A stretch of DNA of 64,000 nucleotides from IMGVR_UViG_3300033145_003233:62001-126000, one strand, 5' to 3'; positions 3,493 to 52,891 are shown, counted from the stretch's first letter. A program made the numbers and translations. The notes: a model not told the origin generated them from the sequence alone.

Positions 3493-3564
3493 GTCGTGTT
3501 GGTGTCAATGGTAGCATATCAGCCCGCCACGCTGAAGGTGAGGGTTCAAGTCCCTTACACGACT
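3493..3564 (+). tRNA. tRNA-Gly (GCC)
   Basis: Acceptor GTCGTGT/ACACGAC; anticodon arm TCAGC-CCGCCAC-GCTGA; T arm GAGGG-TTCAAGT-CCCTT; no encoded CCA. Confidence 0.9.
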
Positions 3565-7145: not shown

Positions 7146-7217
7146 TGAGCAGTAGTTCAATGGTAGAACGTCTGGCTCTGAACCAGAAGGTTGTAGGTTC
7201 AAGTCCTACCTGCTCAA
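7146..7217 (+). tRNA. tRNA-Gln (CTG)
   Basis: Acceptor TGAGCAG/CTGCTCA; D arm GTTC/GAAC; anticodon arm TCTGG-CTCTGAA-CCAGA; T arm GTAGG-TTCAAGT-CCTAC. Confidence 0.95.
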
Positions 7218-7313
7218 CTTTAAGAAAGAAAATGGAAAAAGAAAACGACAGTTTAGAATCTGACCCGTATCATCAGCGATGGTGCGGAATAAATTCTAGG
7301 GTAAGAACAGAGA

Positions 7314-8836: not shown

Positions 8837-10918
8837 ATGGCGAAAACTGAAAAAGTTGATATATTTGCACCTGTCATCGATAAAGGTGAATCTCCAAGAA
8901 TCAAACAACTTGAATTTATCATTACGGCACTTGACACAGCTTTTCATATAAGGGGAGATGATTGCATTAATCCCGTTACAGGAGAAATAGTTCTTGATAA
9001 CGAATATGATGCTCTCAAAAAAGAACTTTTTGCTCTTTGCCCTGAATCCAAGATTTTCAAAAATATTACAGCAGCACAGGGAGAAGTAAAAGGAACGAAA
9101 ATCGTTCATGATCCTCCCATGACTTCTATCGATAAGTGTAATGGGACAGAAGAAGAAAAAGAGCAGATGTTTTCAAGTTGGAGAAAAAAATGTTTTCCAA
9201 TTTTCAAAACAACACTTAGTGCCGTTTTATCTATGTCTTATAAACACGATGGTCTTGCTCTTTCCTGCGAATATGAAAATGGAGAATTAAAAAGGGTAGG
9301 CCTTCGTTCTAAAAGCGGAATGGACGGCATCGATGTTACTGATAAAGCTAAATATATAAAAGGCATTCCTCAAACCCTTAATAAATCTATAACTTGCAAA
9401 ATTAGAGGAGAAGTAGAAACCACAATACCTGAGTTTAAAAGGTCTAGCATCGAACTTGGAGAGAATGCTAAAGCCAACCCAAGAGCGCATACCGCTGGAA
9501 GCATGAATCAAAAAACGGCAGCAAAAATGAAAGATAGAGGATTAAGATTTATAGCTTATAATATTGTGGATATTGAAAACCCTCCATATCAAACAGAAAT
9601 AGAAAGAGCAGAATTTGCCACAAAAGTTCTTAAAATAAATTATGTCAAAACAATTCCCTTCTCTACAAAAACATTGAAATTATTTGAAGAACAACATCGT
9701 AGATTAGATTTTATGGTGGATGGCGTGGTTATTTCTGTTAATCACTTAGAAACACAACAAGATCTTGGACAATCAGGAGATAAAGATACTGGTAATCCTA
9801 GAGGAAAAATAGCATGGAAATTCAAAGACGAAGTTAAACCAGTAACTGTAAAAGATATAATATGGCAAACAGGAAGAGTTGGAAATGTTACTCCTGTTTT
9901 AATATTTGACGGAATACAATTAGAAGGAACAACCGTATCAAAATGTACCGCTCACAATGTAGGAATCATTAAACAAAATTCTATAGGGATAGGCTCTGTC
10001 ATTGAAATTATTAAATCTGGCAAAATAATTCCCAAAATCAAAAAGGTAATTAAAGCTAGTGGTAAACTCAATATTCCTAAAACATGTCCTTCTTGTGGAG
10101 AGAAGGTTATGATTGAACAAGGTTCTGATGGAGCAGAAGCATTAATGTGTCTTTCAAAAGGCTGTCCTGCTCAGAATATAAAAAATCTCAATCACTTCTT
10201 AACCATATTGGGAGTAAAGGGAATCTCAGAAAAAACTATTGGGAAGTTAGCGGACTTGGGGCTTTTAGAAGAACCAAAAGATTTTTATCGTTTAACAGTT
10301 AAGGACTTAATGGAAGAAGGGATAACAGAAAGAAGTGCTATACTTATAGTGGCTAGAGTATGGATGATTCATGCTCCTGAACAAATAAAAGATAATACCA
10401 AATTAGCTATTGCTATAGCCAATAAAATTAAGAATCCGATCAAGATTCCAATGGAGAAGTTGTTTGCAGCTTTCGGAATGAAAAGCGCAGGAAAAGAAGC
10501 TGGCAGAATTCTTTCTAAAACTTATAATGATTGGTATAAAATCAAAACTGCTCTCCCTCAAGAACTTGAGAACCTTGATGGCATTGGTCCAACTATGGCA
10601 AAAGAAATATATGAATTCTTCCATAATAATTGGGAAATGGTTGAAGATGTAGAAGGCTACTTTGAGTTTGAGGCTACCCAACAAAAGGGAGATAAATTAA
10701 AAGGAAAGAAGTTTGTTCTTTCTGGAGCAGTAGATGGTGGAAAATCAAAGTGGAAGAAGATTATAGAAGAAAATGGTGGAGAGATAAAAAGCAGTGTTAG
10801 TAAAAAAGTTGATTACCTTCTCGCAGGAGCTGGCTCTGGTAGTAAAACGGACAAGGCAAACAAGTTGGGAATAACCATTCTAACAACTGAAGATTTAAGT
10901 AAAATGATTGAGGATTAA
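8837..10918 (+). CDS. ligA: NAD-dependent DNA ligase
   Basis: DNEYD (domain Ia), KHDG adenylation motif, RGEV, DGVV, TGRVGNVTPV, CPSC Zn finger, HhH and C-terminal BRCT (FVLSG...SVSKKVDYLLAG). Confidence 0.95.
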   Translation: MAKTEKVDIFAPVIDKGESPRIKQLEFIITALDTAFHIRGDDCINPVTGEIVLDNEYDALKKELFALCPESKIFKNITAAQGEVKGTKIVHDPPMTSIDKCNGTEEEKEQMFSSWRKKCFPIFKTTLSAVLSMSYKHDGLALSCEYENGELKRVGLRSKSGMDGIDVTDKAKYIKGIPQTLNKSITCKIRGEVETTIPEFKRSSIELGENAKANPRAHTAGSMNQKTAAKMKDRGLRFIAYNIVDIENPPYQTEIERAEFATKVLKINYVKTIPFSTKTLKLFEEQHRRLDFMVDGVVISVNHLETQQDLGQSGDKDTGNPRGKIAWKFKDEVKPVTVKDIIWQTGRVGNVTPVLIFDGIQLEGTTVSKCTAHNVGIIKQNSIGIGSVIEIIKSGKIIPKIKKVIKASGKLNIPKTCPSCGEKVMIEQGSDGAEALMCLSKGCPAQNIKNLNHFLTILGVKGISEKTIGKLADLGLLEEPKDFYRLTVKDLMEEGITERSAILIVARVWMIHAPEQIKDNTKLAIAIANKIKNPIKIPMEKLFAAFGMKSAGKEAGRILSKTYNDWYKIKTALPQELENLDGIGPTMAKEIYEFFHNNWEMVEDVEGYFEFEATQQKGDKLKGKKFVLSGAVDGGKSKWKKIIEENGGEIKSSVSKKVDYLLAGAGSGSKTDKANKLGITILTTEDLSKMIED

Positions 10919-11489: not shown

Positions 11490-11623
11490 TAACTACCTTG
11501 TATTACTGAAGTTATAAAAAAATATGAAAAAAGTGATTTTTTCCTTGCAATTTAAAAGTGAAAGTGTATAATATGTCTTGTTGACATTAGCCGTAAATTT
11601 AAAATCCCGAAAGGAATAAGAAA

Positions 11624-12457
11624 ATGGCAAAAGAAAGAATTGATTTAGTTATCATTGACCCCCAAAAAGATTTTTGTTGCTCCGGCACTGGGGGAGAGGT
11701 CCATCAGGGAACTCTTTATGTCGATAATGCGGAAAACGACATGAAAAAAGTGGCGATGCTGGTGGAAAAATTCGGTTCGAAAATTAAAAAGATCCATGTT
11801 ACATTGGATTGTCACCACCTCATCGATATCGCTCATCCTAATATGTGGAGGAATAGCGATGGAAAACATCCGGATCCCTTCACCATTTTTGGATCTAAAG
11901 AAATTCGTGACGGAGAATGGACTCCTATTTACCCGAATCTTCGTCAAAGATTCATTGATTACTGTGAGGCTCTTGAAGCGACAAAGAGATATCCTTTGTG
12001 TATATGGCCTCCCCACTGTCTTATCGGAAGTTCAGGGAATACCATATATGATTCTCTGTTTGAAGTTCTTCTTAAATGGGAAGAGGAAAAGAACAACAAT
12101 GTCGATTATGTGAGTAAGGGTAGCAATCCCTATACAGAACATTATTCGGCTGTTAAGGCAGAGGTTCCTGATCCAAACGATCCCTCCACTCAATTAAACA
12201 CCCGTTTGATTCAGACCTTAATGGAAGCGGATCAAATTCTGATTGCTGGAGAAGCAGGAAGTCATTGCGTTAAGAACACTGTCGAAGATATCGCAGACGG
12301 TTTCGGTGACGATTCCTATGTCAAAAAGATGGTGATGTTGACAGATGGAGTTAGCCCTGTTCTAAGTCCGTATGTTGATTTCCCAGCCATCCAGAAACAA
12401 TTCATCGCTGATATGCAAGTCAGGGGAATGAAAACAGCCTTAACGACTGATTTCTAA
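11624..12457 (+). CDS. Nicotinamidase/isochorismatase-family cysteine hydrolase (PncA-like)
   Basis: LVIIDPQKDF, LDCHH, WPPHC, SKG and GEAGSHCV motifs. Confidence 0.85.
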   Translation: MAKERIDLVIIDPQKDFCCSGTGGEVHQGTLYVDNAENDMKKVAMLVEKFGSKIKKIHVTLDCHHLIDIAHPNMWRNSDGKHPDPFTIFGSKEIRDGEWTPIYPNLRQRFIDYCEALEATKRYPLCIWPPHCLIGSSGNTIYDSLFEVLLKWEEEKNNNVDYVSKGSNPYTEHYSAVKAEVPDPNDPSTQLNTRLIQTLMEADQILIAGEAGSHCVKNTVEDIADGFGDDSYVKKMVMLTDGVSPVLSPYVDFPAIQKQFIADMQVRGMKTALTTDF

Positions 12458-12512
12458 ACCCAGTTTTGTTAAAAATGAATAATAATGAAGAAATAAGAAA
12501 GGAGCAAAAACA

Positions 12513-13256
12513 ATGAGCAACAGTACCACGTTAGTAGAACACAGTCTGACTGGAGATAGTTTTGGATATTCAGCAGCAGACTTAGGGGATTTAGGAGCTA
12601 CAGAATATACTCTCGTCACCATCGCGGTAGATAAGAGTAGTAGCGTTGCTGAATTCGAAACAGAAATGGAAAAATGCATCCAAGAAATTATCAAGGCATG
12701 TAAGTATAGCCCCAGGTCGGACTATCTACTTATTAGGCTCGTAGCCTTTAATCGATCCATGGATGAAATTCATGGTTTCAAACAACTCGTTGACTGTGAA
12801 TTGTCAGATTATGACGGATGCCTGAAGGTCGGAGGTTCGACTCTTCTGTTTGAGACGGCTCGCAATGCCATTTCTTCCACGGCCGACTATGCAAAAGACC
12901 TTGTGGAAAATGAATTTGATGTTAACGCTATCGTTTTCATTCTAACAGACGGAATGGATAATGAATCTGGCAGCATCGATGCTGATTCGGTTGGACAAGC
13001 CCTTCAACAAGCGATGAGAGATGAGAAACTTGAATCTATCTTATCAATCCTTATCGGAGTTGGAGTTGGCAAGTATGCGGGTGTAAGCGATTACCTCAAT
13101 GAATTCAAAACCGATGCAGCACTTAGCCAGTACGTTGAAATCAAAGATGCTAATGACCAAACATTGGCGAAATTAGCAGATTTCATCTCCAAATCTGTGT
13201 CCAGTCAAAGTAATTCTATCGGAACTGGTGGCCCTAGTCAGACCCTCCAGTTTTAG
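12513..13256 (+). CDS. vWA domain protein (TerY-like)
   Basis: MIDAS motif AVDKSSS, GSTLLFE, FILTDG. Confidence 0.85.
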   Translation: MSNSTTLVEHSLTGDSFGYSAADLGDLGATEYTLVTIAVDKSSSVAEFETEMEKCIQEIIKACKYSPRSDYLLIRLVAFNRSMDEIHGFKQLVDCELSDYDGCLKVGGSTLLFETARNAISSTADYAKDLVENEFDVNAIVFILTDGMDNESGSIDADSVGQALQQAMRDEKLESILSILIGVGVGKYAGVSDYLNEFKTDAALSQYVEIKDANDQTLAKLADFISKSVSSQSNSIGTGGPSQTLQF

Positions 13257-13272
13257 TTGGACCAAAGAACAT

Positions 13273-13304
13273 GCCCCACCCGTAATTAGGGTGGGGCTTT
13301 ATTT
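13273..13304 (+). terminator. Intrinsic terminator
   Basis: GCCCCACCC-GTAATTA-GGGTGGGGC followed by TTTATTT. Confidence 0.75.
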
Positions 13305-13318
13305 GAAGGAGATACTAA

Positions 13319-14206
13319 GTGAACACAGATTGCGCTTTTTACATAGGAACGACACATGAAGTCTGTCACGATTACACCCTATCTGGAAAAGATAAGATAA
13401 TACTATCAGACGGTTGCTCTGGGTCTCGCTTATCAGATATGGGTTCAAGAGTATTAAGCATAACAGCAATAAATAAAATAGCAGAAGTTGACGATCTTCA
13501 TAACTTTGAACCGGGAGAATGCATATTGCTTTCTCGCCCCTCAATAAAAATATTAAATCTACCAAATACCTGTTTAGATGCTACCCTACTAGGAGCAGCT
13601 GGTGAAGAGGATTGCTTGCAAGCATTTTGCTATGGAGACGGGACAATAGCACTAAAAACAAAAAACGGGGACATTGCTATCATTGATATAGTTTATACAG
13701 ATAATCATCCTTTTTATATAAATTATCTTTATGATAAAACTGGCAGATTTACAAATTGGGAACAAAATCATAATAAGAGAAAAGTAACTTTATCTATAAT
13801 AAAGAAGGATGGAGAAATTAAACTTATTAAAGACAATTGTGATTATCCCAACATTGTTAACTCTGTTACTAGAATCCCTATGAATGGAGGAGTAGATATA
13901 GGTTTGGTAACAGTTTCTCCCGACAGAACATTTGTCCAAATAGTTAATGATAAAATTGATGATGAAATTGAATGGATTGCCATTATGTCAGATGGGGTTC
14001 ATAGTTTCTATAAGCCCGCTATAACAGAAACCTCAAAGAAGAATGAGCCTGTACCTTATCTTGAAGTTTTAAAATCTTTGTTGAACTTTAAAAATTATAA
14101 TGGCAAATTTGTTCAAAGAAGAATAAATAGATTTCTAAAAGACTGTAAAAAAGCCGACTGGCATAATGCTGATGATGTTTCTTTAGCTGTAATCCATTGC
14201 GGATAG
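13319..14206 (+). CDS. PP2C-like protein phosphatase
   Basis: CHD, ILSDGCSGS, AIMSDGV and DDVS motifs; GTG start. Confidence 0.8.
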   Translation: MNTDCAFYIGTTHEVCHDYTLSGKDKIILSDGCSGSRLSDMGSRVLSITAINKIAEVDDLHNFEPGECILLSRPSIKILNLPNTCLDATLLGAAGEEDCLQAFCYGDGTIALKTKNGDIAIIDIVYTDNHPFYINYLYDKTGRFTNWEQNHNKRKVTLSIIKKDGEIKLIKDNCDYPNIVNSVTRIPMNGGVDIGLVTVSPDRTFVQIVNDKIDDEIEWIAIMSDGVHSFYKPAITETSKKNEPVPYLEVLKSLLNFKNYNGKFVQRRINRFLKDCKKADWHNADDVSLAVIHCG

Positions 14207-14214
14207 GAAACAAA

Positions 14215-16192
14215 ATGTCAAAACACGAAGAAATCTTAAATAAAATTGAAGAAGGGGATAAGAAGCTTGATAAGATTGCAAGGCATCTTAAAAAGAAATT
14301 TGTAGGCATTGATAAGGTTATAGATAAAATTATGCAAAATATTCGCATATGGTATATCTTTCCAGAATTAATCCAAAGACCTATCATTATTTGTTTATGG
14401 GGGTTAACGGGAGTTGGAAAAACTGATCTCGTTAGAACTCTAGTCCGTGAAATTAAATTTTCAGGAAGATACATCGAAACAGATCTTAGCACAAAAAGAA
14501 GTAATTCGATGTGGGGGAGAACAAACGATAGAGAGCATACTTGAATATTCTTCTATAGAGAATGATGAACCAGGTATTTTTCTTCTTGATGAAATACAAA
14601 GGTTTAGAACTATAGATTCTACTGGATTAGAAATCCTTGACACTCCTTATCAAGATTTATGGACATTATTAAGTGATGGTAAATTTAGTTCCAGTGGTCA
14701 GAAAAAAGATCGATTAATGTGCATGTATTTTGATGCTCTTTTTGACGAAGATCAACATAGATCCGAAGAAGAAGAGAAATCAAAAGAAAAAGACGAAGAA
14801 AAAAAAGAAGAGGAAAAAAAGAAGAAAAAACAAACGAAATTCAAACAAAATGTATGGAGAGCGAAGTACCTTAAAAAAACATTGAAACTAAAAGAAACTG
14901 TACTCGAAATTATGAGATGGGACAGTAGAAAAAGGCTCACTTTATTAAAAAACTCTCTAGAACAGATAAGTCTTTTTGAAGGAGAATCTTTCTCTAAATT
15001 GCTTATTTTTATTTCTGGGAATCTTGATGAAGCTTATTATATGGCAGATAGAAATGCTGATGCAGATATTGATGCAGATATTTTCCATGAAAGATCAAAA
15101 AATATTAAAGTCACAAATATTAAAGACGCATTAGGTAAAAGATTCAAACCAGAACAAATTGCTCGTTTTGGTAATACTCATATTATTTATCCCTCATTAT
15201 CGAAAAAAAATTACAGAAAAATAATCCGTAACAACATAAGAAAAACAATCGTTGCTATACAAAAACAACATAATATCAAAATATCATTTGATAAAACAGT
15301 TTATGAATTTATTTATAGAAATGGAGTGTACCCATCGCAAGGAGTTAGACCAGTTCTATCTACAATATCTTCTGTTATTGATAATTCAATTCCTACTTTT
15401 ATCATGTTTTGTTTAAGACAAAATGTGAAAGAAGTAAAGGTTGTTTATAAAAATAGTTATTTATTAGCAGAAATCAACGGTATTATAGAAAAATATGAAA
15501 CCATAGGGGACATAGATGACATTAAAAAAGGTCATGGATTAGATCAAAAAGCTAGCATAGCCACTCACGAGGCAGCACATGCAGTAGTTTATGCTATTTC
15601 TTTCAGCTTAGTCCCTTCTCAAATTGTTGCAAGTTGCTCCCTTCCTGATACAGGAGGGTATATAGGTTGCCATACTTTCTCAGAAAGTAGCAATTATATT
15701 AAAAGACATTTGCAAGTACTATTAGCAGGCAGGGTAGGGGAAGAAATGATATTTGGAGAAGAATTAGTAACTTCGGGAGCAGCCTCAGATCTTGCTCAGG
15801 CCACAAAGTTGGCATCAAAATATTATCGTGTTTTTGGAATGGGAAACACTCTTAGTAAGAAAATGAACAAGTACACAACTCAAGCTCCTCAATTTAATTC
15901 TGATTTTGATGAAGCCAATACTACAATAGAAAGTCTTTTACAAAATGAGAAAAAAGTAGTAGTAGAAACCTTAAAAAACCATAAACCCTTTTTCATGACA
16001 GTCGCTAAAGAATTATATCGAAATGGAAAAATATCATCAATTGATTTTCAAAAAATGGGAGTAAAATTTGGTTTCAAATTCGAAATAGTAAATACTCAAA
16101 GACCAATATACGAAAACTTTGCATCTTTATTAGAAGGTCCAAAAGAGGAACAAGAGCAAATACCTAGAGCAGCTTCTAGTAACCCGAAATAA
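14215..16192 (+). CDS. AAA+ ATPase fused to M41-type Zn peptidase, split by an apparent +1 frameshift at G5 (14513-14517)
   Basis: Walker A GLTGVGKT in frame 1; Walker B FLLDE, Clp-like RFKPEQIARFG and HEAAH / GAASDL (M41) in frame 2; deleting one G joins them into about 658 aa. Confidence 0.75.
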
Positions 16193-16217
16193 ATATAATT
16201 ATTTATGGAAAAATAAT

Positions 16218-17930
16218 ATGGAAGTAAGAGTAAAAGGCAATCAGAAAAAAATCAGACTCAATAAAAATAACTTTATTGCAGCTGGTGGAGAGGGTCAAAT
16301 ATATGCTGCCAACAAAGTTGCATTTAAAATTTATACCAAAGTTAAAAATATGCTTCCGTTTGCCAAGATACAAGAATTATCTGCCATAACTAATTCTAAT
16401 GTAATAAAACCAGAGAAAGTAGTTCTCAACACCAGACAAAAACCTATTGGATATACAATGAAGCATATCTCTGATACATATGCTCTTTGTCAAATATTCC
16501 CCAAGGGGTTTAGAGACAGAATGCATTTAGATGGAGATGCTGTTTTAAAACTTATCCGGAGAATGCAATCAACTATATCTGATATACATAATATGGGAGT
16601 TCTTATCGTTGATTTAAACGAAATGAATTTTCTTGTTGATAAGAAATTCAAAGAGATATATTTTATAGATGTAGATAGTTATCAAACACAAAGTTTTCCA
16701 GCTACAGCAATAATGGAATCTATTAGAGATAGGCATACTCGGAAATTTAGTCAGTTAACAGATTGGTTTTCATTCGGAATAGTTTCTTTCCAAATGTTTG
16801 TCGGCATTCATCCCTATAAAGGAAAACATCCTAAGATACATTATCCTCATGATAAACCGAGACAACTAAATGAGAGAATGGAAAAAAATATTCCTGTTTT
16901 TCATAAAGATGTTAGGTTCCCTCAATCTTGCCTTCCTTTTGGCACTATTCCTAAAATCTATCAGGATTGGTATAAGGCAATATTTTTTGAAGGAAAAAGA
17001 GTACCTCCACCAACAGAGTTAGGACAAGTTATTATTGTTCCTGTTGTAATTAAAACTGTATCTGGAAATGAGGATTTTGAGATCATAGAAATATTTGAAT
17101 ATAGCTCTAATATAGTGAGATTCTTATCGATAGGCGGCATAAGAACAACAGTTACTTCCAAAGATTTTTATATTAATAACAAGATTATGCCTCAAAATTG
17201 CAACCAAGATATCCATGTGGGCATTACTCCCTTGGGTAACAAAGTGATCTCTGCTACATTGAAAGATGGTTGTTTACTTTTATTTAATTCTACTGATAAC
17301 AATGTCCCTAAACATGATATAAGAGCAGAAGATATCATGTCATATAAAGGCAGAATATTTATAAAGAATAAAGACATTCTTTCTGAAATAAAATTTGTAG
17401 AAATGGGAAGTAATATCCATGCTGTGCCTCATCATATAGCAAATGTAATGGAAAATGCTACTAAACTTTTTGATGGGGTCGCTATTCAAAACATCCTGGG
17501 ATCATTCATAGCATCAATTTTTCCTTCCTCTGGAACTCATCATCAAATCCAATGTCCAGAATTTCAAGGATATCAAATAGTTGATGCAAAATACGACAAC
17601 AATGTATTAATGGTTATAGCTAGCCAAAAAGGAAAATATGATAAATTTATCCTGAAATTTGATGAAAAGTTCTCTTCCTACTCGATAAGAAAGGTAGAGG
17701 ATATTTCTTATTGCGGTATTAATTTTGCGGTTTTGGACAATGGAATCGTTATTCATATTAACGAAAATGAAGAAATTGAAATATTTTCTAACAAAAAAGA
17801 TAAAAATACTGTCAAAGTGATTGATAGTTCAGTAATATCGGGAGATATGAAGTTATTTAATGATGGAGCAAAAGTCGTTTTTGCTCAAGGTAAAAAATTA
17901 TATCAACTCAAAATGAAGAAAGGGCAATAA
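16218..17930 (+). CDS. Ser/Thr protein kinase-like protein (TerY-associated type)
   Basis: AGGEGQIY, VAFKIY, IVDLNEMNFLV, FIDVDSYQ; long beta-rich C-terminal region. Confidence 0.8.
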   Translation: MEVRVKGNQKKIRLNKNNFIAAGGEGQIYAANKVAFKIYTKVKNMLPFAKIQELSAITNSNVIKPEKVVLNTRQKPIGYTMKHISDTYALCQIFPKGFRDRMHLDGDAVLKLIRRMQSTISDIHNMGVLIVDLNEMNFLVDKKFKEIYFIDVDSYQTQSFPATAIMESIRDRHTRKFSQLTDWFSFGIVSFQMFVGIHPYKGKHPKIHYPHDKPRQLNERMEKNIPVFHKDVRFPQSCLPFGTIPKIYQDWYKAIFFEGKRVPPPTELGQVIIVPVVIKTVSGNEDFEIIEIFEYSSNIVRFLSIGGIRTTVTSKDFYINNKIMPQNCNQDIHVGITPLGNKVISATLKDGCLLLFNSTDNNVPKHDIRAEDIMSYKGRIFIKNKDILSEIKFVEMGSNIHAVPHHIANVMENATKLFDGVAIQNILGSFIASIFPSSGTHHQIQCPEFQGYQIVDAKYDNNVLMVIASQKGKYDKFILKFDEKFSSYSIRKVEDISYCGINFAVLDNGIVIHINENEEIEIFSNKKDKNTVKVIDSSVISGDMKLFNDGAKVVFAQGKKLYQLKMKKGQ

Positions 17931-18168: not shown

Positions 18169-18531
18169 ATGATCGGGGAGAAAAAAAAGTATCTGATACA
18201 ACTTTTTTTAAAAAGATGTACATTACAAGAAATTAATAGAAAACATATTGATTTCTCATTTGAACTTTTTAAAAATACGTATAATGTCTCGGATGAAGTT
18301 CTGTCCAAATTAAGAAAAAAGTATAATATAGACGAGTATATAGATAGGCTGCTGCCATTAATAGACGAACAATTTACAACTGAAGAATTGCAAGCAATAG
18401 TAAAGTTTTATTCTTCAGATATGGGGAAAAAAATATTAGATCCTATTTTTTTAGAGAAAGTAGGAAAAATAGGTACTAACATGTTTGCTCAAATAGAGCA
18501 AGAATTTTCTATCAACAATAACTTAAAATGA
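18169..18531 (+). CDS. DUF2059-like protein
   Basis: QFTTEELQAIVKFYSSDMGKKIL pattern. Confidence 0.65.
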   Translation: MIGEKKKYLIQLFLKRCTLQEINRKHIDFSFELFKNTYNVSDEVLSKLRKKYNIDEYIDRLLPLIDEQFTTEELQAIVKFYSSDMGKKILDPIFLEKVGKIGTNMFAQIEQEFSINNNLK

Positions 18532-22584: not shown

Positions 22585-23193
22585 ATGGCAAAAGAAAAAT
22601 ATAAATATGAAAAAATATACCAAGGTAAGGGCATCTATAGAAGAAATAGAAAAATAGACAAAACAGGAAAAATAAGAAAAACATATGGTAGAGAAAATTG
22701 CGGCAAAAAACATCTTCAATATATAATCAATGAAATTCAACCAACTTCTATTATAGATGTGGGTTGTGGAAGTAATAAATTCTGTGCTATGTTAAAAAAA
22801 ACTAATATAAAATCAATTGGCATTGATTGCGCCTGCCCTCTTGCAGATGTTATCTCGGATGCTGATAATCTTCCTTTTCACGATAATCAATTTGATTTAT
22901 TAACGGCATTCGATGTACTAGAGCATATACCAGAAGAAGAAATAGATATAGTATTTAAGGAATTTAAAAGAGTAGCTCATCGCTTCATGTATCAAATAGC
23001 CTTAAGAAAATCTCCCTCCTCCATAGATCATGAGACATTACACCCGACAGTTAAACCTTATGACTGGTGGATAGATAAAATTACAAAAGATGATCCAAAA
23101 ATAATTAAGATAATGTATAAACGAAAAAGGTACATAGTCCCGCCAGAAGATGCAAAGAAACTTATTATTTATGGAATATTTGATAAGACATAA
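22585..23193 (+). CDS. Class I SAM-dependent methyltransferase (paralog 1)
   Basis: IIDVGCG, LPFHDNQFDLLTAFDVLEHIP. Confidence 0.85.
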   Translation: MAKEKYKYEKIYQGKGIYRRNRKIDKTGKIRKTYGRENCGKKHLQYIINEIQPTSIIDVGCGSNKFCAMLKKTNIKSIGIDCACPLADVISDADNLPFHDNQFDLLTAFDVLEHIPEEEIDIVFKEFKRVAHRFMYQIALRKSPSSIDHETLHPTVKPYDWWIDKITKDDPKIIKIMYKRKRYIVPPEDAKKLIIYGIFDKT

Positions 23194-24117: not shown

Positions 24118-24759
24118 ATGGCAAAAGAAAAATACAAATACGAAAAAATATATCAGGGCAAAGGTGAATTCAAAAGAATTTATCAGCTAGATGGATCGGG
24201 AAAGAAACGAGAGATGTATGGACATAATAACCACGGTAAACAATATTTTAAGTTTATACTAAGAAAAGTTAAACCCACTTCGGTTGTAGATATAGGTTGT
24301 GGATATAATGAATTTTGTGAGATGCTGAAAGAAAAAGGAATAGAATCAGTAGGTGTTGACTTCGCCTGTCCCGGAGCCGACATAATGGCTAGTGCTGAAA
24401 ACCTTCCTTTTAGAGATGGGCAGTTTGATTTATTAACAGCATTCGATGTATTAGAGCATATACCAGAAGAAGAAATAGATACATCATTAAAAGAATTTGA
24501 GAGAATAGCTCATCGCTTTATGTATAAAATATGTTTAAGAAAAGATTTTAAAAAAATAGATGGAGAAACATTGCACCCCACAGTTAGATTCCCTGAATGG
24601 TGGATAGATAAAATTACAAAAAATGGTGGACATATAGGCCAAATAATATATTCTAATAAAAAAGGAATAATGCCAAAATGCAGGGCTAAAATATTAACCG
24701 TTTATGGATTTTTTCATGTAAAACCACCTCCTCCAAAAAGCAAATCATATTATGATTAA
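24118..24759 (+). CDS. Class I SAM-dependent methyltransferase (paralog 2)
   Basis: VVDIGCG, LPFRDGQFDLLTAFDVLEHIP; same MAKEKYKYEK start. Confidence 0.85.
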   Translation: MAKEKYKYEKIYQGKGEFKRIYQLDGSGKKREMYGHNNHGKQYFKFILRKVKPTSVVDIGCGYNEFCEMLKEKGIESVGVDFACPGADIMASAENLPFRDGQFDLLTAFDVLEHIPEEEIDTSLKEFERIAHRFMYKICLRKDFKKIDGETLHPTVRFPEWWIDKITKNGGHIGQIIYSNKKGIMPKCRAKILTVYGFFHVKPPPPKSKSYYD

Positions 24760-31786: not shown

Positions 31787-31849
31787 ATTTTCTCAATATT
31801 TTCTTGAAAAGTGATTGTATCTATAATATAATCTTTGAAAGGATTTCCT

Positions 31850-32512
31850 ATGACAAAACAAAGAATCTTATTATTTGGCGGCACATTTAACCCTATCCAT
31901 GTGGGACATCTCCTAATGGCCCAGGAAGCCGTAGAACGTCTCAATTTCGATAAAGTCATTTTTATACCCTCTGCTATCCCCCCCTTCAAGAAAAGCCCTG
32001 TATCGTTCTCTCAGAGGCTCAAAATGGTCACTATGGCTATCGATGGTATAGACTATTTCGAAGTTTCAGATATAGAGGCAAAAAGGGGTGGTCCAAGCTA
32101 TACAATCGATACTGTCAGATATTTCAAAGAAAAATGCCAGAACTGGGCAAAAATCTATTGGATGATAGGTTCTGACTGTGTTAAAGAGTTAACAAAATGG
32201 CATAAAATAAGAGAACTTCTTGATGAATGCATATTTGTGATAGCCGAAAGAAATCAATATAGAAATTATGAGGGGGGAGATTTTATGTCGTTTGTTTATG
32301 AAACCCTGAAAGAAATAGCAGATATAAATCAACCTATCATGACAAATCATTTTACCCCTCTTATTAATAGGGTATTAGAAATTTCCTCAAGTGATATCCG
32401 AGATAGATTAAGATGTGATGAATCAATCAGGTTTTTAGTTCCTGAAGCAATAGAACAATATATAAAAGATAATGAACTCTATTCAAATAACAGACAACAT
32501 ATCGCTGTATAA
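31850..32512 (+). CDS. nadD: Nicotinate-nucleotide adenylyltransferase
   Basis: ILLFGGTFNPIHVGHL, SYTIDT, WMIGSD, ISSSDIR. Confidence 0.92.
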   Translation: MTKQRILLFGGTFNPIHVGHLLMAQEAVERLNFDKVIFIPSAIPPFKKSPVSFSQRLKMVTMAIDGIDYFEVSDIEAKRGGPSYTIDTVRYFKEKCQNWAKIYWMIGSDCVKELTKWHKIRELLDECIFVIAERNQYRNYEGGDFMSFVYETLKEIADINQPIMTNHFTPLINRVLEISSSDIRDRLRCDESIRFLVPEAIEQYIKDNELYSNNRQHIAV

Positions 32513-35947: not shown

Positions 35948-36090
35948 TTTTTTCTCTCTAAATAATAGTCTATTATTTTTCTAGTCATTTCAGAAAAAGT
36001 TATTTCTCTATTTTCTGCTTCTTTATAAATTGCTTTGTGTTGTTTTTCTGTTATATACATTTCTGTTCTTCTCATTTTCTTTTTTGACAT
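35944..36090 (-). CDS. Small ribbon-helix-helix (CopG-like) protein, not in the ORF track
   Basis: MSKKKMRRTEMYITEKQHKAIYKEAENREITFSEMTRKIIDYYLERKK; AGGAG SD; stop overlaps the HNH start. Confidence 0.65.
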   Translation of the reverse strand: MSKKKMRRTEMYITEKQHKAIYKEAENREITFSEMTRKIIDYYLERKK

Positions 36091-36233
36091 TTTTATTTCT
36101 CCTATATATTATATACGGTGTTATAACTGATACTCCTCTTTTTATCGGAAATTATTAAAAACTTCTTTAAAAGTGAATGAATAAGTTGTATAATAAGAAA
36201 TAGATTATATAATTAAATTAAGGAGAGCAAGGT

Positions 36234-37268
36234 ATGAATATAGTATTAATCATTCCCACAGGGATAGGATGTGAAATAGGAGGCAATTGCGGAGATGCCA
36301 ATCCAGTAGCTAAATTAATTGGGAAATGTTGTGACAATCTTATTCTACATCCAAATGTAGTTAATGCTTCAGATGTAAATGAAATGCCTGAGAATACATG
36401 GTACGTAGAAGGAAGTCATCTAGATGAGTTTTTAGAAGGAAATTTATTTTTAGAAAGAGTTCATCAGAATAGAGTTTTAATAGCAGTAAATAAAGCAGAT
36501 TGGCAATCTATAAATGCAGTTTCTGCTGCTAGAGCAACAATAGGATCTAATGCAGAAATTATTGAATTAGAGACTCCTCTGGAATTAATTGCTCAAATAA
36601 AAAATAAAGTAGCCACAGGAAAAGTTAATGGATGGGCAAGACTAGTGGAGCAATTAGCTCCATATGAATACGATGCCTTAGGAATAGCCACTCCTATTAC
36701 AATTTCCGAAGAAATGTTAAGACATTATTTTAAAGTGGGAGGAGTAAATCCTGTTGGTGGAGTAGAGGCTGTTGCTACTAGATTAATAGGAAGTGCCATT
36801 GGAAAGCCCGTAGCTCATGGACCAGTAGACTACGCAATACCTGGATTTGAAGAGATAGTAGATCCTCGAAAAGCTGTTGAAGTAGTTACGTTAAATTTTA
36901 TTCATTGCTTATTAAAGGGCCTTAATAAAGCCCCTAAACTTATCTTCCGTCCATTTGAACATAAGTTCGATAATAAAAGTAATAAAAGTCTAGGAGTGGA
37001 AGATGTAGATTTTATGATAAGCCCTCATGGATGCTGGGGCCGGCCTCATAAAGCTTGCAGAGAAAAGGGTATTCCTATTATTATAGTAAAAGAAAACACA
37101 TCTGTTCTTAATGATGGCTATCCTTCTGGAACTGATTTGATTTTTGTAGAAAACTATCTTGAAGCAGCTGGATATATTCAATCTATCAAAGCAGGAGTTA
37201 ACCCTTCTTCTGTAATAAGGCCATTAACGAGTACTATAGTGTGGTCTTCTAAGAACCAACAGCCTTAA
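36234..37268 (+). CDS. DUF3326 family protein
   Basis: IIPTGIGCEIGGNCGDANP, LILHPNVVNASD, NYLEAAG. Confidence 0.8.
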   Translation: MNIVLIIPTGIGCEIGGNCGDANPVAKLIGKCCDNLILHPNVVNASDVNEMPENTWYVEGSHLDEFLEGNLFLERVHQNRVLIAVNKADWQSINAVSAARATIGSNAEIIELETPLELIAQIKNKVATGKVNGWARLVEQLAPYEYDALGIATPITISEEMLRHYFKVGGVNPVGGVEAVATRLIGSAIGKPVAHGPVDYAIPGFEEIVDPRKAVEVVTLNFIHCLLKGLNKAPKLIFRPFEHKFDNKSNKSLGVEDVDFMISPHGCWGRPHKACREKGIPIIIVKENTSVLNDGYPSGTDLIFVENYLEAAGYIQSIKAGVNPSSVIRPLTSTIVWSSKNQQP

Positions 37269-37575
37269 ATTTTCCAACAGGACAAGTGAGTTTAAGATTC
37301 TGAGAAATAGCAACGAGAGAAAGTCCTTTTTTAATTTTGTGGCATATCCTTATTCTGGACTTTTCTTCTAATCTAGTTTGTATTGAGTGTGAACATTTGC
37401 TACATATAGCACGTCTTTGAGCTTGTATCCCCAGCTTTAGTTGCTCTGCTTTCATGACTTTACCATTTTTTACTAATCTTTTTGCTTTCAGCTTTCTTGC
37501 TTTCCGCATAGCTTTATTCTTAGCTTTATCTCTAGCTATTCTATTTTTTCTAGCTTTTCCACAACCGCAGCCCAT
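37249..37575 (-). CDS. Basic Cys-containing hypothetical protein
   Basis: MGCGCGK start, CSKC and CPVGK; GGGAG SD. Confidence 0.6.
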   Translation of the reverse strand: MGCGCGKARKNRIARDKAKNKAMRKARKLKAKRLVKNGKVMKAEQLKLGIQAQRRAICSKCSHSIQTRLEEKSRIRICHKIKKGLSLVAISQNLKLTCPVGKFKAVGS

Positions 37576-37641
37576 ATAGTTCTCCCTTTTATTATTGGTA
37601 ATAATTAATCGAAAACCTTTATAGATCTCGATAAATATATT

Positions 37642-37971
37642 ATGGATAAATACGAAAACATGAGAAAAATTATAAAAGAAGAAAATAATGATGTCTTATT
37701 TTTAGCACATGAGTTTAATGAGGCCCTTATGGGCAGTTGTCTTATTGAAACAAATAAAGCTGTGGCTGTTTATGATACTGATATTTATATAAGAATATTA
37801 ATAAAGAATCTTGAAATAGAAGAGCTAGAGGCATTGAAAAAGTTAGAAGATTGTATTCTCTATTATTATGGCTACCCAAATCATCCGGTATTTATTAATG
37901 ATTTTAGACGAATAAAAATGGTTAATCTTGAACATTTAGAACCAACAGATACAATAGAAGATCTATCTTAA
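37642..37971 (+). CDS. Hypothetical protein
   Basis: 109 aa ORF. Confidence 0.6.
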   Translation: MDKYENMRKIIKEENNDVLFLAHEFNEALMGSCLIETNKAVAVYDTDIYIRILIKNLEIEELEALKKLEDCILYYYGYPNHPVFINDFRRIKMVNLEHLEPTDTIEDLS

Positions 37972-38351
37972 GAAGCGCAAACAGGCCACTCTGATATATC
38001 ATATCCTATATCTTCAGATATGTAGGACCAGTTAATGGGAATGCAACCTTCATCCCATGAAACTCCATTAATAAATACTGCAAGGTCTCCATAAGTTCTC
38101 TCAGTAAAAACATTTATTGCTTTTATAATCCTTTTTCTTTCTCCGTCTATATCCCAGTTATCTAATGCCCATCTATGAAATCTATCCATTTTACCAAGTA
38201 AAGCAAGTTCAGCGGCGAGTCCATCATCAGAGCTATCTATATCCACAATGGTTAAAAGAGCATTATAGATGTAGCCCACAGCCCCCGGTTTATCTGTAAC
38301 GGTAGCTTCTATGTCTAAAACGAGTGATTTATAAGTCTCTTCCCATGCCAT
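37968..38351 (-). CDS. Hypothetical protein
   Basis: 127 aa ORF. Confidence 0.6.
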   Translation of the reverse strand: MAWEETYKSLVLDIEATVTDKPGAVGYIYNALLTIVDIDSSDDGLAAELALLGKMDRFHRWALDNWDIDGERKRIIKAINVFTERTYGDLAVFINGVSWDEGCIPINWSYISEDIGYDISEWPVCAS

Positions 38352-38465
38352 AATACTATTAATTTCTATTTTTACCCTAAATTTCCTCTAAATTCCAGTT
38401 TTTTTGTTGGAAAGTGAATGTGTTTTCGATTATAATATATAGACATAATATTCAGGAGATGAAAA

Positions 38466-38903
38466 ATGATAAAAGTAGGTTTCACAGGTACTCGTCATGG
38501 GATGAACGATACCCAAAAAGAAGAATTCTCAAAAATAATTCATGCCAAAGAATTTTCAGAGTTCCACCACGGAGTCTGTATAGGCTCAGATAAAGAAGCT
38601 CATGATATAGTTACTAAGCTGAAAATAGACAAACTTAAAAATGGAAAGGGTGATATTAAAAGAGTTGGACATCCTCCCAAATTTAAAGGATCTATGGCAG
38701 ATTGTGAATGTGACCTTTTAATGAAGGCTGATGAATATCTAGCAAGGAATCACAATATTGTAAATCACACAGATGTTCTTGTTGCAACTCCTGATACAAA
38801 AGAAAAAATAAGATCAGGTACATGGTCAACCGTTAGATATGCTCGTAAACTGGGAAAGAAAATTTATATCATTCATAAAAATGGGAGGATAACAATAGAA
38901 TGA
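38466..38903 (+). CDS. SLOG superfamily (DprA/Smf-like) protein
   Basis: VGFTGTR, HHGVCIGSD, RNHNIV, RSGTWSTVRYA. Confidence 0.7.
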   Translation: MIKVGFTGTRHGMNDTQKEEFSKIIHAKEFSEFHHGVCIGSDKEAHDIVTKLKIDKLKNGKGDIKRVGHPPKFKGSMADCECDLLMKADEYLARNHNIVNHTDVLVATPDTKEKIRSGTWSTVRYARKLGKKIYIIHKNGRITIE

Positions 38904-39268
38904 AAAAGCAACGTGTAGAGATTAGACCAGGAGATTGGTTTTGGATATACTGCGAAAACGGCGAATATGGGACTGTGCATTTTGATGAACCACAAAAAAT
39001 TGCTAAAGTAAAGGGTAAATTTTTTCAAATTGTAAATTACGACAGACAATATGATAAAGGTGAAAAGTACACGATATCTAATTACAAGTTCACTAGAGTC
39101 TCTAAAAAGAAATGCGATGAAAAAATAGAACTTATAGCAAAAATAGATGAAGCAGAAAAACTCATCGCTAGGCTGATAACGGAGATAGTCAAAAAAATAG
39201 AAAATATTGATGATGACATTGATGTTAGCTATCATGATGGCAAATATGCAAGTCAGAAATATATCTAA
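38900..39268 (+). CDS. Hypothetical protein
   Basis: 122 aa ORF, ATGA overlap. Confidence 0.6.
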   Translation: MKKQRVEIRPGDWFWIYCENGEYGTVHFDEPQKIAKVKGKFFQIVNYDRQYDKGEKYTISNYKFTRVSKKKCDEKIELIAKIDEAEKLIARLITEIVKKIENIDDDIDVSYHDGKYASQKYI

Positions 39269-39286
39269 TAACAAGGAAAAAATAAC

Positions 39287-52422: not shown

Positions 52423-52891
52423 CCCAAAATCTCCATAATTCACCTAAAAATTGATACTGATAAGCAAACTCTTCTGCTTCTCTTTCGTCCATATCGAAGT
52501 TAATTCCTTCTTGTATTCCATGTGCCAACTCATGTAGTATAGACATTTCTAAATCACTTTTCAACTCAGAACCATATTCTGTAGCAATTTCTCTGGTTCT
52601 TTCTATGTCTATAAGGATAACAACCCATGGTTGTGTCCCGCTTATATATCGTGCTATCATCTCCTTTCCATCATTCTGAACAAAACCAACTTTGATATCT
52701 TGAATAAATCCTATTTGTGGTAATAATTCTTTTTTTAATTTGTTTATATATTGTTCTACATATTGGACTATTTGTTGATCTGGGTTGTTATTCATCTCAT
52801 AGTCCCAGTTAGGATCATAATCATGCTCTGCTCCAGGATATTCCCATTTAGGAGATTCTTCAAATTGTTGAGATTTTTTATACCAATTCAT
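52403..52891 (-). CDS. MNWYK-family protein with HExxH metallopeptidase-like motif
   Basis: MNWYKKSQ start; ILHELAHGIQE. Confidence 0.7.
   Translation of the reverse strand: MNWYKKSQQFEESPKWEYPGAEHDYDPNWDYEMNNNPDQQIVQYVEQYINKLKKELLPQIGFIQDIKVGFVQNDGKEMIARYISGTQPWVVILIDIERTREIATEYGSELKSDLEMSILHELAHGIQEGINFDMDEREAEEFAYQYQFLGELWRFWDDQKQI

What the first reader, a model, noticed from the sequence alone, without database searches (positions are those of the whole stretch)
11545..17930. Phage-borne TerY-P-like triad extended with a nicotinamidase and an AAA+/M41 protease
Seen: the order is nicotinamidase-like hydrolase, vWA (DxSxS MIDAS), terminator, PP2C phosphatase, Clp-like AAA+ fused to an HExxH M41 peptidase, and a kinase with a DLNEMN catalytic loop. 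Established: vWA(TerY) + PP2C + kinase form the TerY-phosphorylation triad described in Ter-stress systems (Anantharaman, Iyer and Aravind 2012), and a TerY-P system showed anti-phage activity (Gao et al. 2020). Inference: this phage uses a phosphorylation switch linked to regulated proteolysis and NAD-related chemistry, for inter-phage exclusion or host manipulation. The protease inserted in the triad is the unusual part.
Basis: partly seen in the sequence, partly recalled or inferred. Interest (0 to 1): 0.65.

Follow-up and report, generated by a model that had tools for sequence, protein, structure and literature searches.

The report
Phage nicotinamidase-vWA-phosphatase-kinase cassette
A 548-kb phage carries a four-gene unit (nicotinamidase, metal-binding vWA protein, PP2C phosphatase, kinase with a beta-propeller) that recurs in the same order in about eighty other huge-phage and bacterial loci, often beside NAD-recycling genes, whereas the broken protease gene lying inside it here is a one-off insertion and not part of the unit.

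Summary
The interpretation needs re-centring.

- **The conserved unit has four genes, not five.** Nicotinamidase, vWA, PP2C and kinase keep this order in 45 of 53 non-redundant huge-phage loci and 37 of 63 MAG or genome loci. Some of those are bacterial chromosomes with housekeeping flanks.
- **It sits among NAD salvage genes.** NAPRTase (PncB) and NAD synthase (NadE) lie beside or inside it in 23 of 53 viral loci. This phage also encodes PncB, NadD, NadE and an NAD-dependent ligase.
- **The protease is not part of it.** It lies inside the cassette only here. None of 55 other viral loci with a protease homologue has the kinase, PP2C or nicotinamidase within 9 kb. The gene is split by one extra G (G5 against G4), and two strains share the break.
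- **It is not a TerY-P member.** No PADLOC TerY-P model matches, and the kinase ends in a beta-propeller, not a zinc ribbon or OB fold.

Best reading: a TerY-P-like phospho-switch tied to nicotinamide-to-NAD+ salvage, with an unrelated, probably dead protease inserted. The link between the triad and NAD salvage did not turn up in my literature searches.

The parts
8837..10918 (+). NAD-dependent DNA ligase. It consumes NAD+ and is a syntenic neighbour of the cassette in the window's clade.
   Evidence: Pfam DNA_ligase_aden, OB, HHH and BRCT domains. phrog_3869 at E 1e-131. Also lies upstream of the cassette in L005, L009, L010 and L011.
11545..11572 (+). Promoter-like site (TTGCAA-16-TATAAT) in the 135-bp gap before the nicotinamidase gene.
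   Evidence: Consensus scan only. The region holds no more such sites than shuffled sequence, so this is weak evidence.
11624..12457 (+). Nicotinamidase-like (PncA-like) hydrolase, first gene of the conserved cassette.
   Evidence: Pfam Isochorismatase. Profile A4's best PDB hits are nicotinamidases. Lys165 and Cys215 are invariant and Asp12 nearly invariant across 21 homologues; metal-site Asp62, His64 and His131 are invariant.
12513..13256 (+). vWA protein with a complete MIDAS and a conserved Ser-rich C-terminal tail (about 13185-13253).
   Evidence: MIDAS residues D40, S42, S44, T110 and D146 are invariant. AlphaFold2 pLDDT is 92 with vWA/integrin I-domain matches. The tail SxSISSQSQALGTGGPSQxLxF is conserved in 89 of 90 loci.
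13273..13297 (+). Intrinsic-terminator-like hairpin followed by a U-run, then an AAGGAG ribosome-binding site before the GTG start of PP2C.
   Evidence: Equivalent hairpins with different stem sequences follow the vWA gene in L005, L009, L010 and L011.
13319..14206 (+). PP2C-type phosphatase.
   Evidence: PP2C_2. All 21 of 21 family members hit PP2C_2, best E 1.9e-17. The metal-binding Asp/Gly motifs are invariant.
14215..16192 (+). Soluble AAA+ (ClpB-D2-like) / M41 (FtsH-like) protease gene. It is split by a +1 frameshift at the G5 run 14513-14517. It is an insertion specific to this lineage and not part of the conserved cassette.
   Evidence: The break separates Walker A (14401-14424) from Walker B (14579-14599).
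16218..17930 (+). Ser/Thr kinase (residues 1-260) fused to a C-terminal beta-propeller (residues 285-570). Last gene of the cassette.
   Evidence: Pkinase. K37, D132, N137, D151 and D153 are invariant. AlphaFold2 pLDDT is 83. Foldseek returns LRRK2 (kinase + WD40) and WD40 propellers.
18169..18531 (+). DUF2059 protein. It lies downstream of the kinase only in the window's close clade.
   Evidence: Pfam DUF2059. Present after the kinase in L005, L007, L009, L010 and L011, and after the protease in L002.
31835..32512 (+). NadD (nicotinate-nucleotide adenylyltransferase). It completes the phage's Preiss-Handler route.
   Evidence: TIGR00482 at 183.7 bits against a cut-off of 112. PncB lies at genome 46218-46964 and NadE at 52494-53231.

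Best explanation
The locus is a mosaic of two things.

(A) A conserved four-gene cassette: PncA-like nicotinamidase, vWA (MIDAS), PP2C phosphatase, and a Ser/Thr kinase with a C-terminal beta-propeller. It belongs to the nicotinamide-to-NAD+ (Preiss-Handler) salvage neighbourhood of huge phages and of some bacteria.

(B) An unrelated soluble AAA+/M41 protease gene that landed between PP2C and the kinase only in this phage lineage. One extra G breaks it.

Shown:
- the domain identities;
- intact catalytic and metal-binding residues in all four cassette proteins;
- the conserved gene order across phages and cellular chromosomes;
- recurrent PncB and NadE beside or inside the cassette;
- a conserved terminator after the vWA gene;
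- the protease's absence from every other cassette.

Inferred:
- The nicotinamidase turns nicotinamide into nicotinate. Nicotinamide is also the product of NAD+-cleaving host defences. The phage's own PncB, NadD and NadE would then carry nicotinate on to NAD+, which among other things feeds the adjacent NAD-dependent ligase.
- The kinase and PP2C form a reversible switch. Its likeliest substrate is the vWA protein, through its conserved Ser-rich C-terminal tail.
- The propeller is the docking or sensing domain.
- The phosphorylation state of the vWA protein gates the nicotinamidase or the salvage flux.
- Nicotinamidase and vWA are made as one transcript. PP2C and the kinase are made at lower level by read-through of the terminator.
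- In this phage the protease contributes nothing unless a +1 frameshift is decoded.
For: - **Order conserved in viral loci.** Nicotinamidase, vWA, PP2C and kinase, in that order and on one strand, in 45 of 53 non-redundant viral or assembly loci. Kinase identity falls as low as 30%. Genes overlap in compact versions such as L042 and L060.
- **Order conserved in MAG and genome loci.** Same order in 37 of 63 loci. In L084, L077 and L073 the flanks are housekeeping genes.
- **NAD salvage neighbours.** PncB and/or NadE lie within 9 kb in 23 of 53 viral loci, and between vWA and kinase in 10 of them. The own genome has PncB, NadE and NadD and LigA.
- **Nicotinamidase identity.**
- **vWA fold, MIDAS and tail.**
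- **PP2C.**
- **Kinase plus propeller.**
- **Terminator conserved in five relatives.**
- **Protease is separate.** 0 of 55 homologue loci have cassette genes. On one 460,978-bp relative contig the protease (L183) lies about 235 kb from the cassette (L011).
- **Frameshift is real.** It is shared by two strains that differ by 17 SNPs.
- **Literature.** Jumbo-phage NAD synthesis by the Preiss-Handler route is already described (PMC11662467).
Against: - No experiment or expression data were available; no sequencing run was listed.
- Functional coupling of the nicotinamidase to the triad rests on synteny alone. The one co-folding test of nicotinamidase with vWA gave no answer.
- The vWA-PP2C and PP2C-kinase junctions are interrupted by more than 400 bp in about 45% of loci, so the unit is looser than a strict operon.
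- In this genome PncB and NadE lie 20-27 kb from the cassette and NadD lies about 20 kb downstream.
- Five Blastocatellia/Acidobacteriota loci appear to lack PP2C.
- The substrate of the isochorismatase-like enzyme has not been measured.
- The 581-codon downstream protease frame is still fully open, so a decoded frameshift cannot be excluded.
Confidence: 0.55

Rival explanations
1. All five genes form one phage-borne TerY-P-like defence or exclusion system, in which the phospho-switch controls regulated proteolysis by the AAA+/M41 protease and NAD-related chemistry.
For: The genes are adjacent and co-directional. The domains are as described. In the relative L002 the protease also lies next to a nicotinamidase-like gene.
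Against: The protease is absent from every other cassette locus. Cassette genes are absent from 55 protease loci. The protease is frameshifted between Walker A and Walker B, and the genome has no second copy. There are no PADLOC TerY-P hits. The cassette also sits in housekeeping contexts in bacteria.
Confidence: 0.06
2. The four-gene cassette is a conflict module rather than a salvage regulator. The triad senses a signal, and the isochorismatase-like enzyme is the effector. It would destroy nicotinamide or an NAD-derived or nicotinamide-containing signal or toxin, either to starve the host's salvage or to disarm a defence.
For: vWA-PP2C-kinase triads are known from defence contexts (PMC11090510). 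NAD metabolism is a known phage-host battlefield. The kinase domain shows weak similarity to the defence kinases PD-T4-6, mad6 and MkoA.
Against: The enzyme keeps every nicotinamidase-specific catalytic and metal residue. Its recurrent neighbours are the next enzymes of the same pathway, PncB and NadE. The bacterial copies have housekeeping flanks, not defence islands.
Confidence: 0.15
3. Adjacency without coupling. The nicotinamidase is simply a salvage enzyme. The vWA-PP2C-kinase triad does something else, for example phosphorylating host proteins during takeover. The shared order is inherited history.
For: Unrelated genes are often inserted between cassette members. A terminator separates nicotinamidase-vWA from PP2C-kinase. 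Co-folding gave no support (which is not evidence either way).
Against: The order holds down to 30% kinase identity and across phages, Acidobacteriota, Armatimonadota and other lineages. The nicotinamidase-vWA junction is the tightest, with a median of 26 bp. PncB and NadE insert inside the triad rather than only next to the nicotinamidase.
Confidence: 0.16
4. The protease is functional through a programmed +1 ribosomal frameshift at UGG-GGG-AGA, where tRNA-Gly would slip from GGG to GGA. In this lineage it has been recruited to the triad.
For: Two strains keep the identical G5 run, and the 581-codon downstream frame is fully open. It is the only copy of a gene that is otherwise widespread in huge phages.
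Against: The full-length homologues aligned here read through in one frame, and the closest has G4 at this site. The two strains differ by no SNP in the gene, so conservation says nothing about selection. No stimulatory element was looked for or seen.
Confidence: 0.08

Closest known systems
TerY-P triad: TerY-like vWA + PP2C + Ser/Thr kinase (Anantharaman, Iyer and Aravind 2012; Gao et al. 2020; as summarised in PMC11090510)
   Same: The same three domain types are encoded together. The vWA has a complete MIDAS. The inferred logic is also the same: a reversible phosphorylation switch around a metal-binding vWA protein.
   Different: The kinase's C-terminal domain is a beta-propeller, not a zinc ribbon or OB fold. 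No PADLOC TerY-P model matches any of the three proteins. The constant fourth partner is a nicotinamidase. The neighbours are NAD salvage genes rather than Ter, restriction or CoCoNuT genes. The cassette occurs in huge phages and in housekeeping regions of bacterial chromosomes.
NAD+ synthesis gene clusters of 'NAD-jumbo phages' (PMC11662467) and the phage NAD+ reconstitution pathways NARP1, NARP2 and NARP3 (bioRxiv 10.1101/2024.02.11.579819; PMC13464706)
   Same: A huge phage encodes a full route to NAD+ (PncA-like, PncB, NadD, NadE) plus NAD-consuming enzymes. The plausible role is to keep NAD+ up during infection.
   Different: Those reports describe enzymes only. The NAD-jumbo phage paper does not mention a kinase or vWA at all. 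NARP1-3 use Adps/Namat, Nampt/Nmnat or PnuC/NadR, not PncA. Here a phospho-signalling triad is embedded in the salvage neighbourhood.
Deinococcus radiodurans vWA-STPK-FHA-PP2C operon (bioRxiv 10.64898/2026.01.23.701218)
   Same: It is a bacterial operon that combines a vWA protein, a Ser/Thr kinase and a PP2C phosphatase as a signalling module.
   Different: The gene order differs. It has an FHA protein and no nicotinamidase, and it is linked to DNA-damage signalling. I read only the abstract.
FtsH (AAA+ / M41 zinc protease) and the ClpA/ClpB D2 module
   Same: The inserted gene has an M41 peptidase domain with HEAAH, and an AAA+ module with a ClpB_D2-small lid.
   Different: Scores are far below the FtsH equivalog cut-off (50.8 bits against 600). 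It forms its own family of roughly 650-residue proteins, found on huge-phage contigs in the contexts examined, with more than 1,000 homologues. The copy here is split by a frameshift.

Membership tests
TerY-P defence system | TerY-like vWA protein recognised by the system's HMM | tested here: not met
   There is a vWA fold and a MIDAS. However, neither the window protein nor any of its 20 aligned homologues matches a PADLOC TerY-P model at E 0.01.
TerY-P defence system | PP2C-like phosphatase encoded with the vWA and the kinase | tested here: met
   PP2C_2 in 21 of 21 family members. It lies between vWA and kinase in 45 of 53 viral loci. There is no PADLOC hit for the window protein.
TerY-P defence system | Ser/Thr kinase fused at its C-terminus to a zinc ribbon (classical form) or an OB fold (the defence form of Gao et al.), as stated in PMC11090510 | tested here: not met
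   In the AlphaFold2 model, residues 285-570 are all-beta. Foldseek returns WD40-type propellers and LRRK2. PADLOC gives only generic kinase hits: PD-T4-6, mad6 and MkoA.
TerY-P defence system | Association with Ter, restriction or other defence genes, or a demonstrated anti-phage phenotype | tested here: not met
   The neighbours are PncB, NadE and LigA in phages and housekeeping genes in bacteria. The phenotype cannot be tested with these tools.
Nicotinamidase (PncA) within the isochorismatase superfamily | Asp-Lys-Cys catalytic triad and an Asp/His/His metal site | tested here: met
   K165, C215, D62, H64 and H131 are invariant and D12 is nearly invariant in 21 sequences. These residues align with yeast Pnc1, the best PDB hit at E 6.5e-16.
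Nicotinamidase (PncA) within the isochorismatase superfamily | Score above curated family cut-offs; measured activity on nicotinamide | tested here: not met
   Pfam gives 25.4 bits against a cut-off of 27. NCBIfam PRK11609 gives 29.6 bits against 174. This is a divergent branch with an insert of about 90 residues. Enzyme activity cannot be tested with these tools.
vWA domain with MIDAS | Rossmann-like vWA fold with DxSxS...T...D | tested here: met
Hanks-type Ser/Thr kinase | Gly-rich loop, VAIK Lys, catalytic-loop Asp and Asn, and a DFG-like Asp | tested here: met
   GGEG (residues 23-26), K37, D132, N137, D151 and D153 are invariant in 20 sequences. Pkinase scores 25.5 bits, below the cut-off of 31.7. 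The profile hits NEK2 and RSK kinases in the PDB.
FtsH / peptidase M41 | AAA+ ATPase fused to an M41 domain with HExxH, read in one frame; membrane anchor | tested here: not met
   The M41 domain and HEAAH are present. The reading frame is broken between Walker A and Walker B. The FtsH equivalog scores 50.8 bits against a cut-off of 600. Transmembrane segments were not tested.
Preiss-Handler NAD+ salvage pathway (phage-encoded) | PncA, PncB, NadD and NadE all encoded in one genome | tested here: met
   PncA-like at window 11624-12457. PncB at genome 46218-46964, 214.5 bits. NadE at genome 52494-53231, 218.9 bits. NadD at window 31835-32512, 183.7 bits against a cut-off of 112.

The most novel reading that the evidence does not exclude
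The nicotinamidase-vWA-PP2C-kinase(propeller) cassette is an undescribed, phosphorylation-gated control module for NAD+ salvage, shared by huge phages and some bacteria (Acidobacteriota, Armatimonadota). In phages it would switch on the rebuilding of NAD+ from nicotinamide when host defences cleave NAD+. The vWA protein's conserved Ser-rich tail would be the phospho-acceptor, read by the kinase's propeller or by the MIDAS site.
Probability: 0.3. Interest if true: 0.75.

Novelty: new variant of a known kind. Interest (0 to 1): 0.55.

Why it matters
NAD+ depletion is a major bacterial anti-phage strategy. Three phage NAD+ reconstitution pathways have been reported since 2024. Jumbo phages are already known to carry Preiss-Handler genes.

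What my literature searches did not turn up is a signalling layer on that pathway. Here a vWA/PP2C/kinase switch is wired next to the nicotinamidase in 82 of the 116 phage and bacterial loci surveyed. If the switch controls salvage, three things follow:
- Ser/Thr phosphorylation, an otherwise poorly understood layer of bacterial and viral regulation, would be tied to a central metabolite.
- TerY-P-like triads would gain a concrete, assayable output.
- A further regulated counter-defence route would be added to those already known.

The analysis also corrects the original lead. The protease, flagged as the unusual part, is a broken passenger.

Tried and rejected
- **Single-protein locus search.** The search of viral contigs with the protease found nothing. 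An alignment-based search was needed.
- **DNA search of the phage collection.** It gave only a 161-bp match to an uncultured 485-kb phage.
- **PDB sequence searches.** The vWA profile gave no hit, and the PP2C profile gave only insignificant hits (E 0.37 and 0.7). The vWA was settled by structure prediction instead.
- **Co-folding of nicotinamidase with vWA.** The verdict was 'no answer' with a score of 0.00. It is not evidence for or against binding.
- **Sequencing runs.** None was listed. The G-run length and expression could therefore not be checked in reads, and read laying was not used.
- **Rfam at gathering thresholds.** The scan covered the window and four cassette loci and found only two tRNAs. 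No NAD+ or other riboswitch lies ahead of the cassette.
- **Terminase models.** Three Pfam models (PF03237, PF03354, PF17289) found nothing in the 548-kb record. I therefore did not verify the viral nature through hallmark genes. It rests on the IMG/VR and CheckV classification, on kinase homologues in GenBank 'uncultured phage' genomes of 485 and 595 kb, and on PHROG hits. The Shine-Dalgarno sites and intrinsic terminators show that expression is prokaryotic.
- **Tree method.** The maximum-likelihood tree with the default method did not finish. FastTree was used instead. It is rooted at the midpoint for drawing only, so I make no claim about the direction of transfer between phages and bacteria.
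- **Alternative genetic code.** Considered and rejected as the cause of the split protease gene. The two parts lie in different frames, and the first frame runs into several TGA codons.
- **Protease recruited to NAD genes generally.** Considered and rejected. Only 1 of 55 protease loci has PncB and NadE nearby.

Full report
**Where the window lies.** The window is bases 62001-126000 of a 547,943-bp IMG/VR virus record that CheckV rates as complete. The region of the finding is a run of co-directional + strand genes.

**Check of the observation.**
- 11624-12457 encodes a 277-residue isochorismatase-superfamily protein.
- 12513-13256 encodes a 247-residue protein with DKSSS at residues 40-44. 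It has no Pfam hit of its own at E 0.01. However, 15 of 21 aligned homologues match VWA_2 and 9 match VWA. The five MIDAS residues (D40, S42, S44, T110, D146) are invariant. An AlphaFold2 model (pLDDT 92, pTM 0.90) matches integrin I-domains and other vWA domains.
- A 9-bp GC-rich hairpin followed by a U-run lies at 13273-13297 (z-score -3.5). An AAGGAG ribosome-binding site and the GTG start of a PP2C_2 protein follow, at 13319-14206. All 21 aligned homologues match PP2C_2.
- The AAA+/M41 gene occupies 14215-16192 in two frames.
- 16218-17930 encodes a 570-residue kinase with DLNEMN at residues 132-137.

**The frameshift.**
- The frame-1 product matches full-length homologues up to ...SNSMWG. 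The frame-2 product matches them from EQTIESILEYSS onward.
- At the DNA level the window has G5 at 14513-14517, where the closest intact homologue (L002, 62% protein identity) has G4.
- The break separates Walker A (14401-14424) from Walker B (14579-14599). The two products cannot form an ATPase unless the shift is decoded.
- An NCBI MAG contig (L003) carries the same G5. It differs from the window by 17 substitutions over 11,011 bases, none of them in the protease. Two strains therefore share the break, and a one-off assembly error is unlikely.
- The genome has no second copy of the gene.
- No sequencing run was listed, so read-level checks were not possible.

**What is conserved: the kinase survey.**
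- The kinase has more than 2,500 full-length homologues of about 560 residues, up to 71% identical.
- Three contexts looked up by exact protein showed nicotinamidase-like, vWA, PP2C and kinase in that order, with no protease.
- I then fetched 56 viral loci with a kinase alignment. All loci were annotated with iterated profile searches seeded from the window's proteins.
- Among 53 non-redundant loci, 45 have nicotinamidase-like, vWA, PP2C and kinase in this order on one strand. Three of the other eight are cut by the locus edge.
- The nicotinamidase-vWA junction is tight, with a median of 26 bp. The vWA-PP2C and PP2C-kinase junctions hold more than 400 bp of extra DNA in about 45% of loci.
- The recurrent passengers in those gaps are NAPRTase (PncB) and NAD synthase (NadE), the latter in both its short form and its long CN-hydrolase-fused form.
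- PncB and/or NadE lie within 9 kb in 23 of 53 loci, and between vWA and kinase in 10 of them.

**The cassette is also cellular.**
- A scan of one genome per prokaryote species found 63 loci, all on MAG records. Of these, 37 have the four genes in order, and most of the rest are cut by contig ends.
- In a complete 4.1-Mb Capsulimonadaceae chromosome the cassette is followed by PncB. Its flanks are LeuB, LeuA, an FGGY sugar kinase, an MFS transporter and a translation-type GTPase.
- Acidobacteriota and Armatimonadota contigs likewise have housekeeping flanks.
- Other 'MAG' loci look like misbinned phage. One example is L102, whose kinase nearly matches that of the viral locus L040 in the tree. 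Another is L123, which has TROVE and CCA-adding enzyme neighbours.
- A FastTree of 107 kinases gives two results. The window falls in an all-viral group of seven (support 99). The 33 Acidobacteriota, Armatimonadota and one Actinomycetota-labelled sequences fall in one cluster. The tree is rooted at the midpoint for drawing only, so no direction of transfer is claimed.

**The protease is a separate story.**
- It belongs to a family of more than 1,000 soluble proteins of about 650 residues with AAA+ and M41 domains.
- In three contexts looked up by exact protein it sits among replication and nucleotide-metabolism genes, and a protein of about 260 residues follows it.
- I fetched 55 viral loci with a family alignment. 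None has the kinase, PP2C or nicotinamidase within 9 kb. One has a vWA-like ORF and one has PncB plus NadE.
- On one 460,978-bp contig related to the window's phage, the cassette (L011) and the protease (L183) lie about 235 kb apart.
- The only other place where the protease touches this locus is L002. There the order is nicotinamidase-like, intact protease, a 119-residue ORF, then DUF2059, and the triad is missing.
- L002's nicotinamidase is only 44% identical to the window's, against 71-74% for L005 and L009. Its protease is 62% identical.
- One possible reading is that the protease came in by exchange with an L002-like phage at this syntenic locus. That is inference.

**Identity of the cassette proteins.**
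- *Nicotinamidase-like protein.* A profile of 21 homologues finds nicotinamidases as its best solved relatives, led by yeast Pnc1 at E 6.5e-16. The catalytic Lys and Cys (K165, C215) and the Asp/His/His metal site (D62, H64, H131) are invariant, and the catalytic Asp (D12) is nearly so. Scores fall below the curated cut-offs, so this is a divergent branch with an insert of about 90 residues.
- *Kinase.* It keeps the Gly-rich loop, K37, D132, N137, D151 and D153. Its model (pLDDT 83) has a kinase domain at residues 1-260 and an all-beta domain at 285-570. Foldseek matches the latter to WD40-type propellers, and the whole protein to LRRK2, which is a kinase plus WD40.
- *vWA protein.* It ends in a strikingly conserved tail, SxSISSQSQALGTGGPSQxLxF. 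The tail is present in 89 of 90 loci from both phages and bacteria, and it ends in Phe in 72. In the model the last dozen residues are extended.

**NAD context in this genome.**
- The phage encodes PncB at genome 46218-46964.
- NadE lies at genome 52494-53231.
- NadD lies at window 31835-32512, above the TIGR00482 cut-off.
- An NAD-dependent ligase lies at 8837-10918, just upstream of the cassette.
- Together with the PncA-like enzyme, this is a complete Preiss-Handler route from nicotinamide to NAD+.

**Transcription units.** The terminator after the vWA gene is not a chance hairpin. L005, L009, L010 and L011 each have a strong GC-rich hairpin plus U-run at the same place, with different stem sequences. 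This suggests that nicotinamidase and vWA are made together, and that PP2C and the kinase depend on read-through or on their own promoter.

**Comparison with known systems.**
- TerY-P is defined as a TerY-like vWA, a PP2C, and a kinase fused to a zinc ribbon. In the stand-alone defence form of Gao et al. the fusion is to an OB fold (PMC11090510).
- The present triad has the same three domain types, and so probably works as the same kind of switch.
- It fails the membership tests that could be run. There is no PADLOC TerY-P hit for the window's three proteins or for the aligned vWA and kinase homologues. The kinase carries a propeller instead of a Zn-ribbon or OB fold. The neighbours are NAD salvage genes rather than defence genes.
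- Complete NAD+ synthesis routes in jumbo phages are already described (PMC11662467). That paper has no mention of a kinase or vWA.
- NARP1-3 use other enzymes.
- A comparative overview of jumbo phages has no mention of PP2C, and no passage on this cassette.
- Searches for the combination of nicotinamidase, vWA and PP2C found nothing relevant. That is not proof of novelty, because most subscription journals are outside the library.

**Verdict.**
- The unusual protease is the least meaningful part: a broken, lineage-specific passenger at a junction that often takes insertions.
- The best-supported reading is a TerY-P-like phospho-switch attached to nicotinamide salvage. The mechanism beyond domain identities and synteny is inferred.

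Noticed in passing
window 17775-17840 (kinase codons 520-541): 14 of the 17 differences between the window and the near-identical strain contig L003 are packed into 66 bases of the last propeller blades. Several of them change residues. This looks like a recombination tract or a fast-evolving surface.
   Followed up: partly
window 12513-13256, residues 225-247; also 89 other loci: The vWA protein's C-terminal tail (SxSISSQSQALGTGGPSQxLxF, ending in Phe or Ile) is conserved from phages to Acidobacteriota. It is a candidate phospho-acceptor or docking peptide.
   Followed up: partly
window 31835-32512: A NadD (nicotinate-nucleotide adenylyltransferase) gene that scores above the curated cut-off, about 20 kb downstream of the cassette.
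   Followed up: yes
window 22585-23193 and 24118-24759: Two methyltransferase-like ORFs are paralogous, with about 73% DNA identity over 515 bases between 22585-23092 and 24118-24625.
   Followed up: no
window 3493-3564 and 7146-7218: tRNA-Gly(GCC) and tRNA-Gln(CTG) genes, found by ARAGORN and by Rfam.
   Followed up: yes
window about 36000-40000: Cumulative GC skew peaks here. The coding strand switches from mostly + to mostly - at the same place. This could mark a replication landmark, or it could simply follow the change in transcription direction.
   Followed up: no
L070, L072, L074, L078, L120 (Blastocatellia/Acidobacteriota MAG contigs): These loci show nicotinamidase, vWA and kinase with no detectable PP2C between them. 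Four of the five (L070, L072, L074, L120) group together in the kinase tree and have an altered vWA tail (SRSILAQSQVLG...SSL[VI]F). The phosphatase may have been lost in that subclade.
   Followed up: no
L004, and the contexts of P0013 and P0017: In other huge phages, an uncharacterised ORF of about 260-267 residues with no Pfam match follows the AAA+/M41 protease directly. It may be the protease's usual partner.
   Followed up: no
whole 547,943-bp record: Three Pfam terminase models (Terminase_6N, TerL_ATPase, Terminase_6C) found nothing in the record. Any terminase is therefore too divergent for these models, or it is absent.
   Followed up: partly
L140 (IMGVR_UViG_GVMAG-S-1041352-47) and P0054: AAA+/M41 homologues also occur on a contig binned as a giant-virus MAG, and in a protein labelled ftsH of Symbiodinium. 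These are probably misassigned huge-phage sequences.
   Followed up: no
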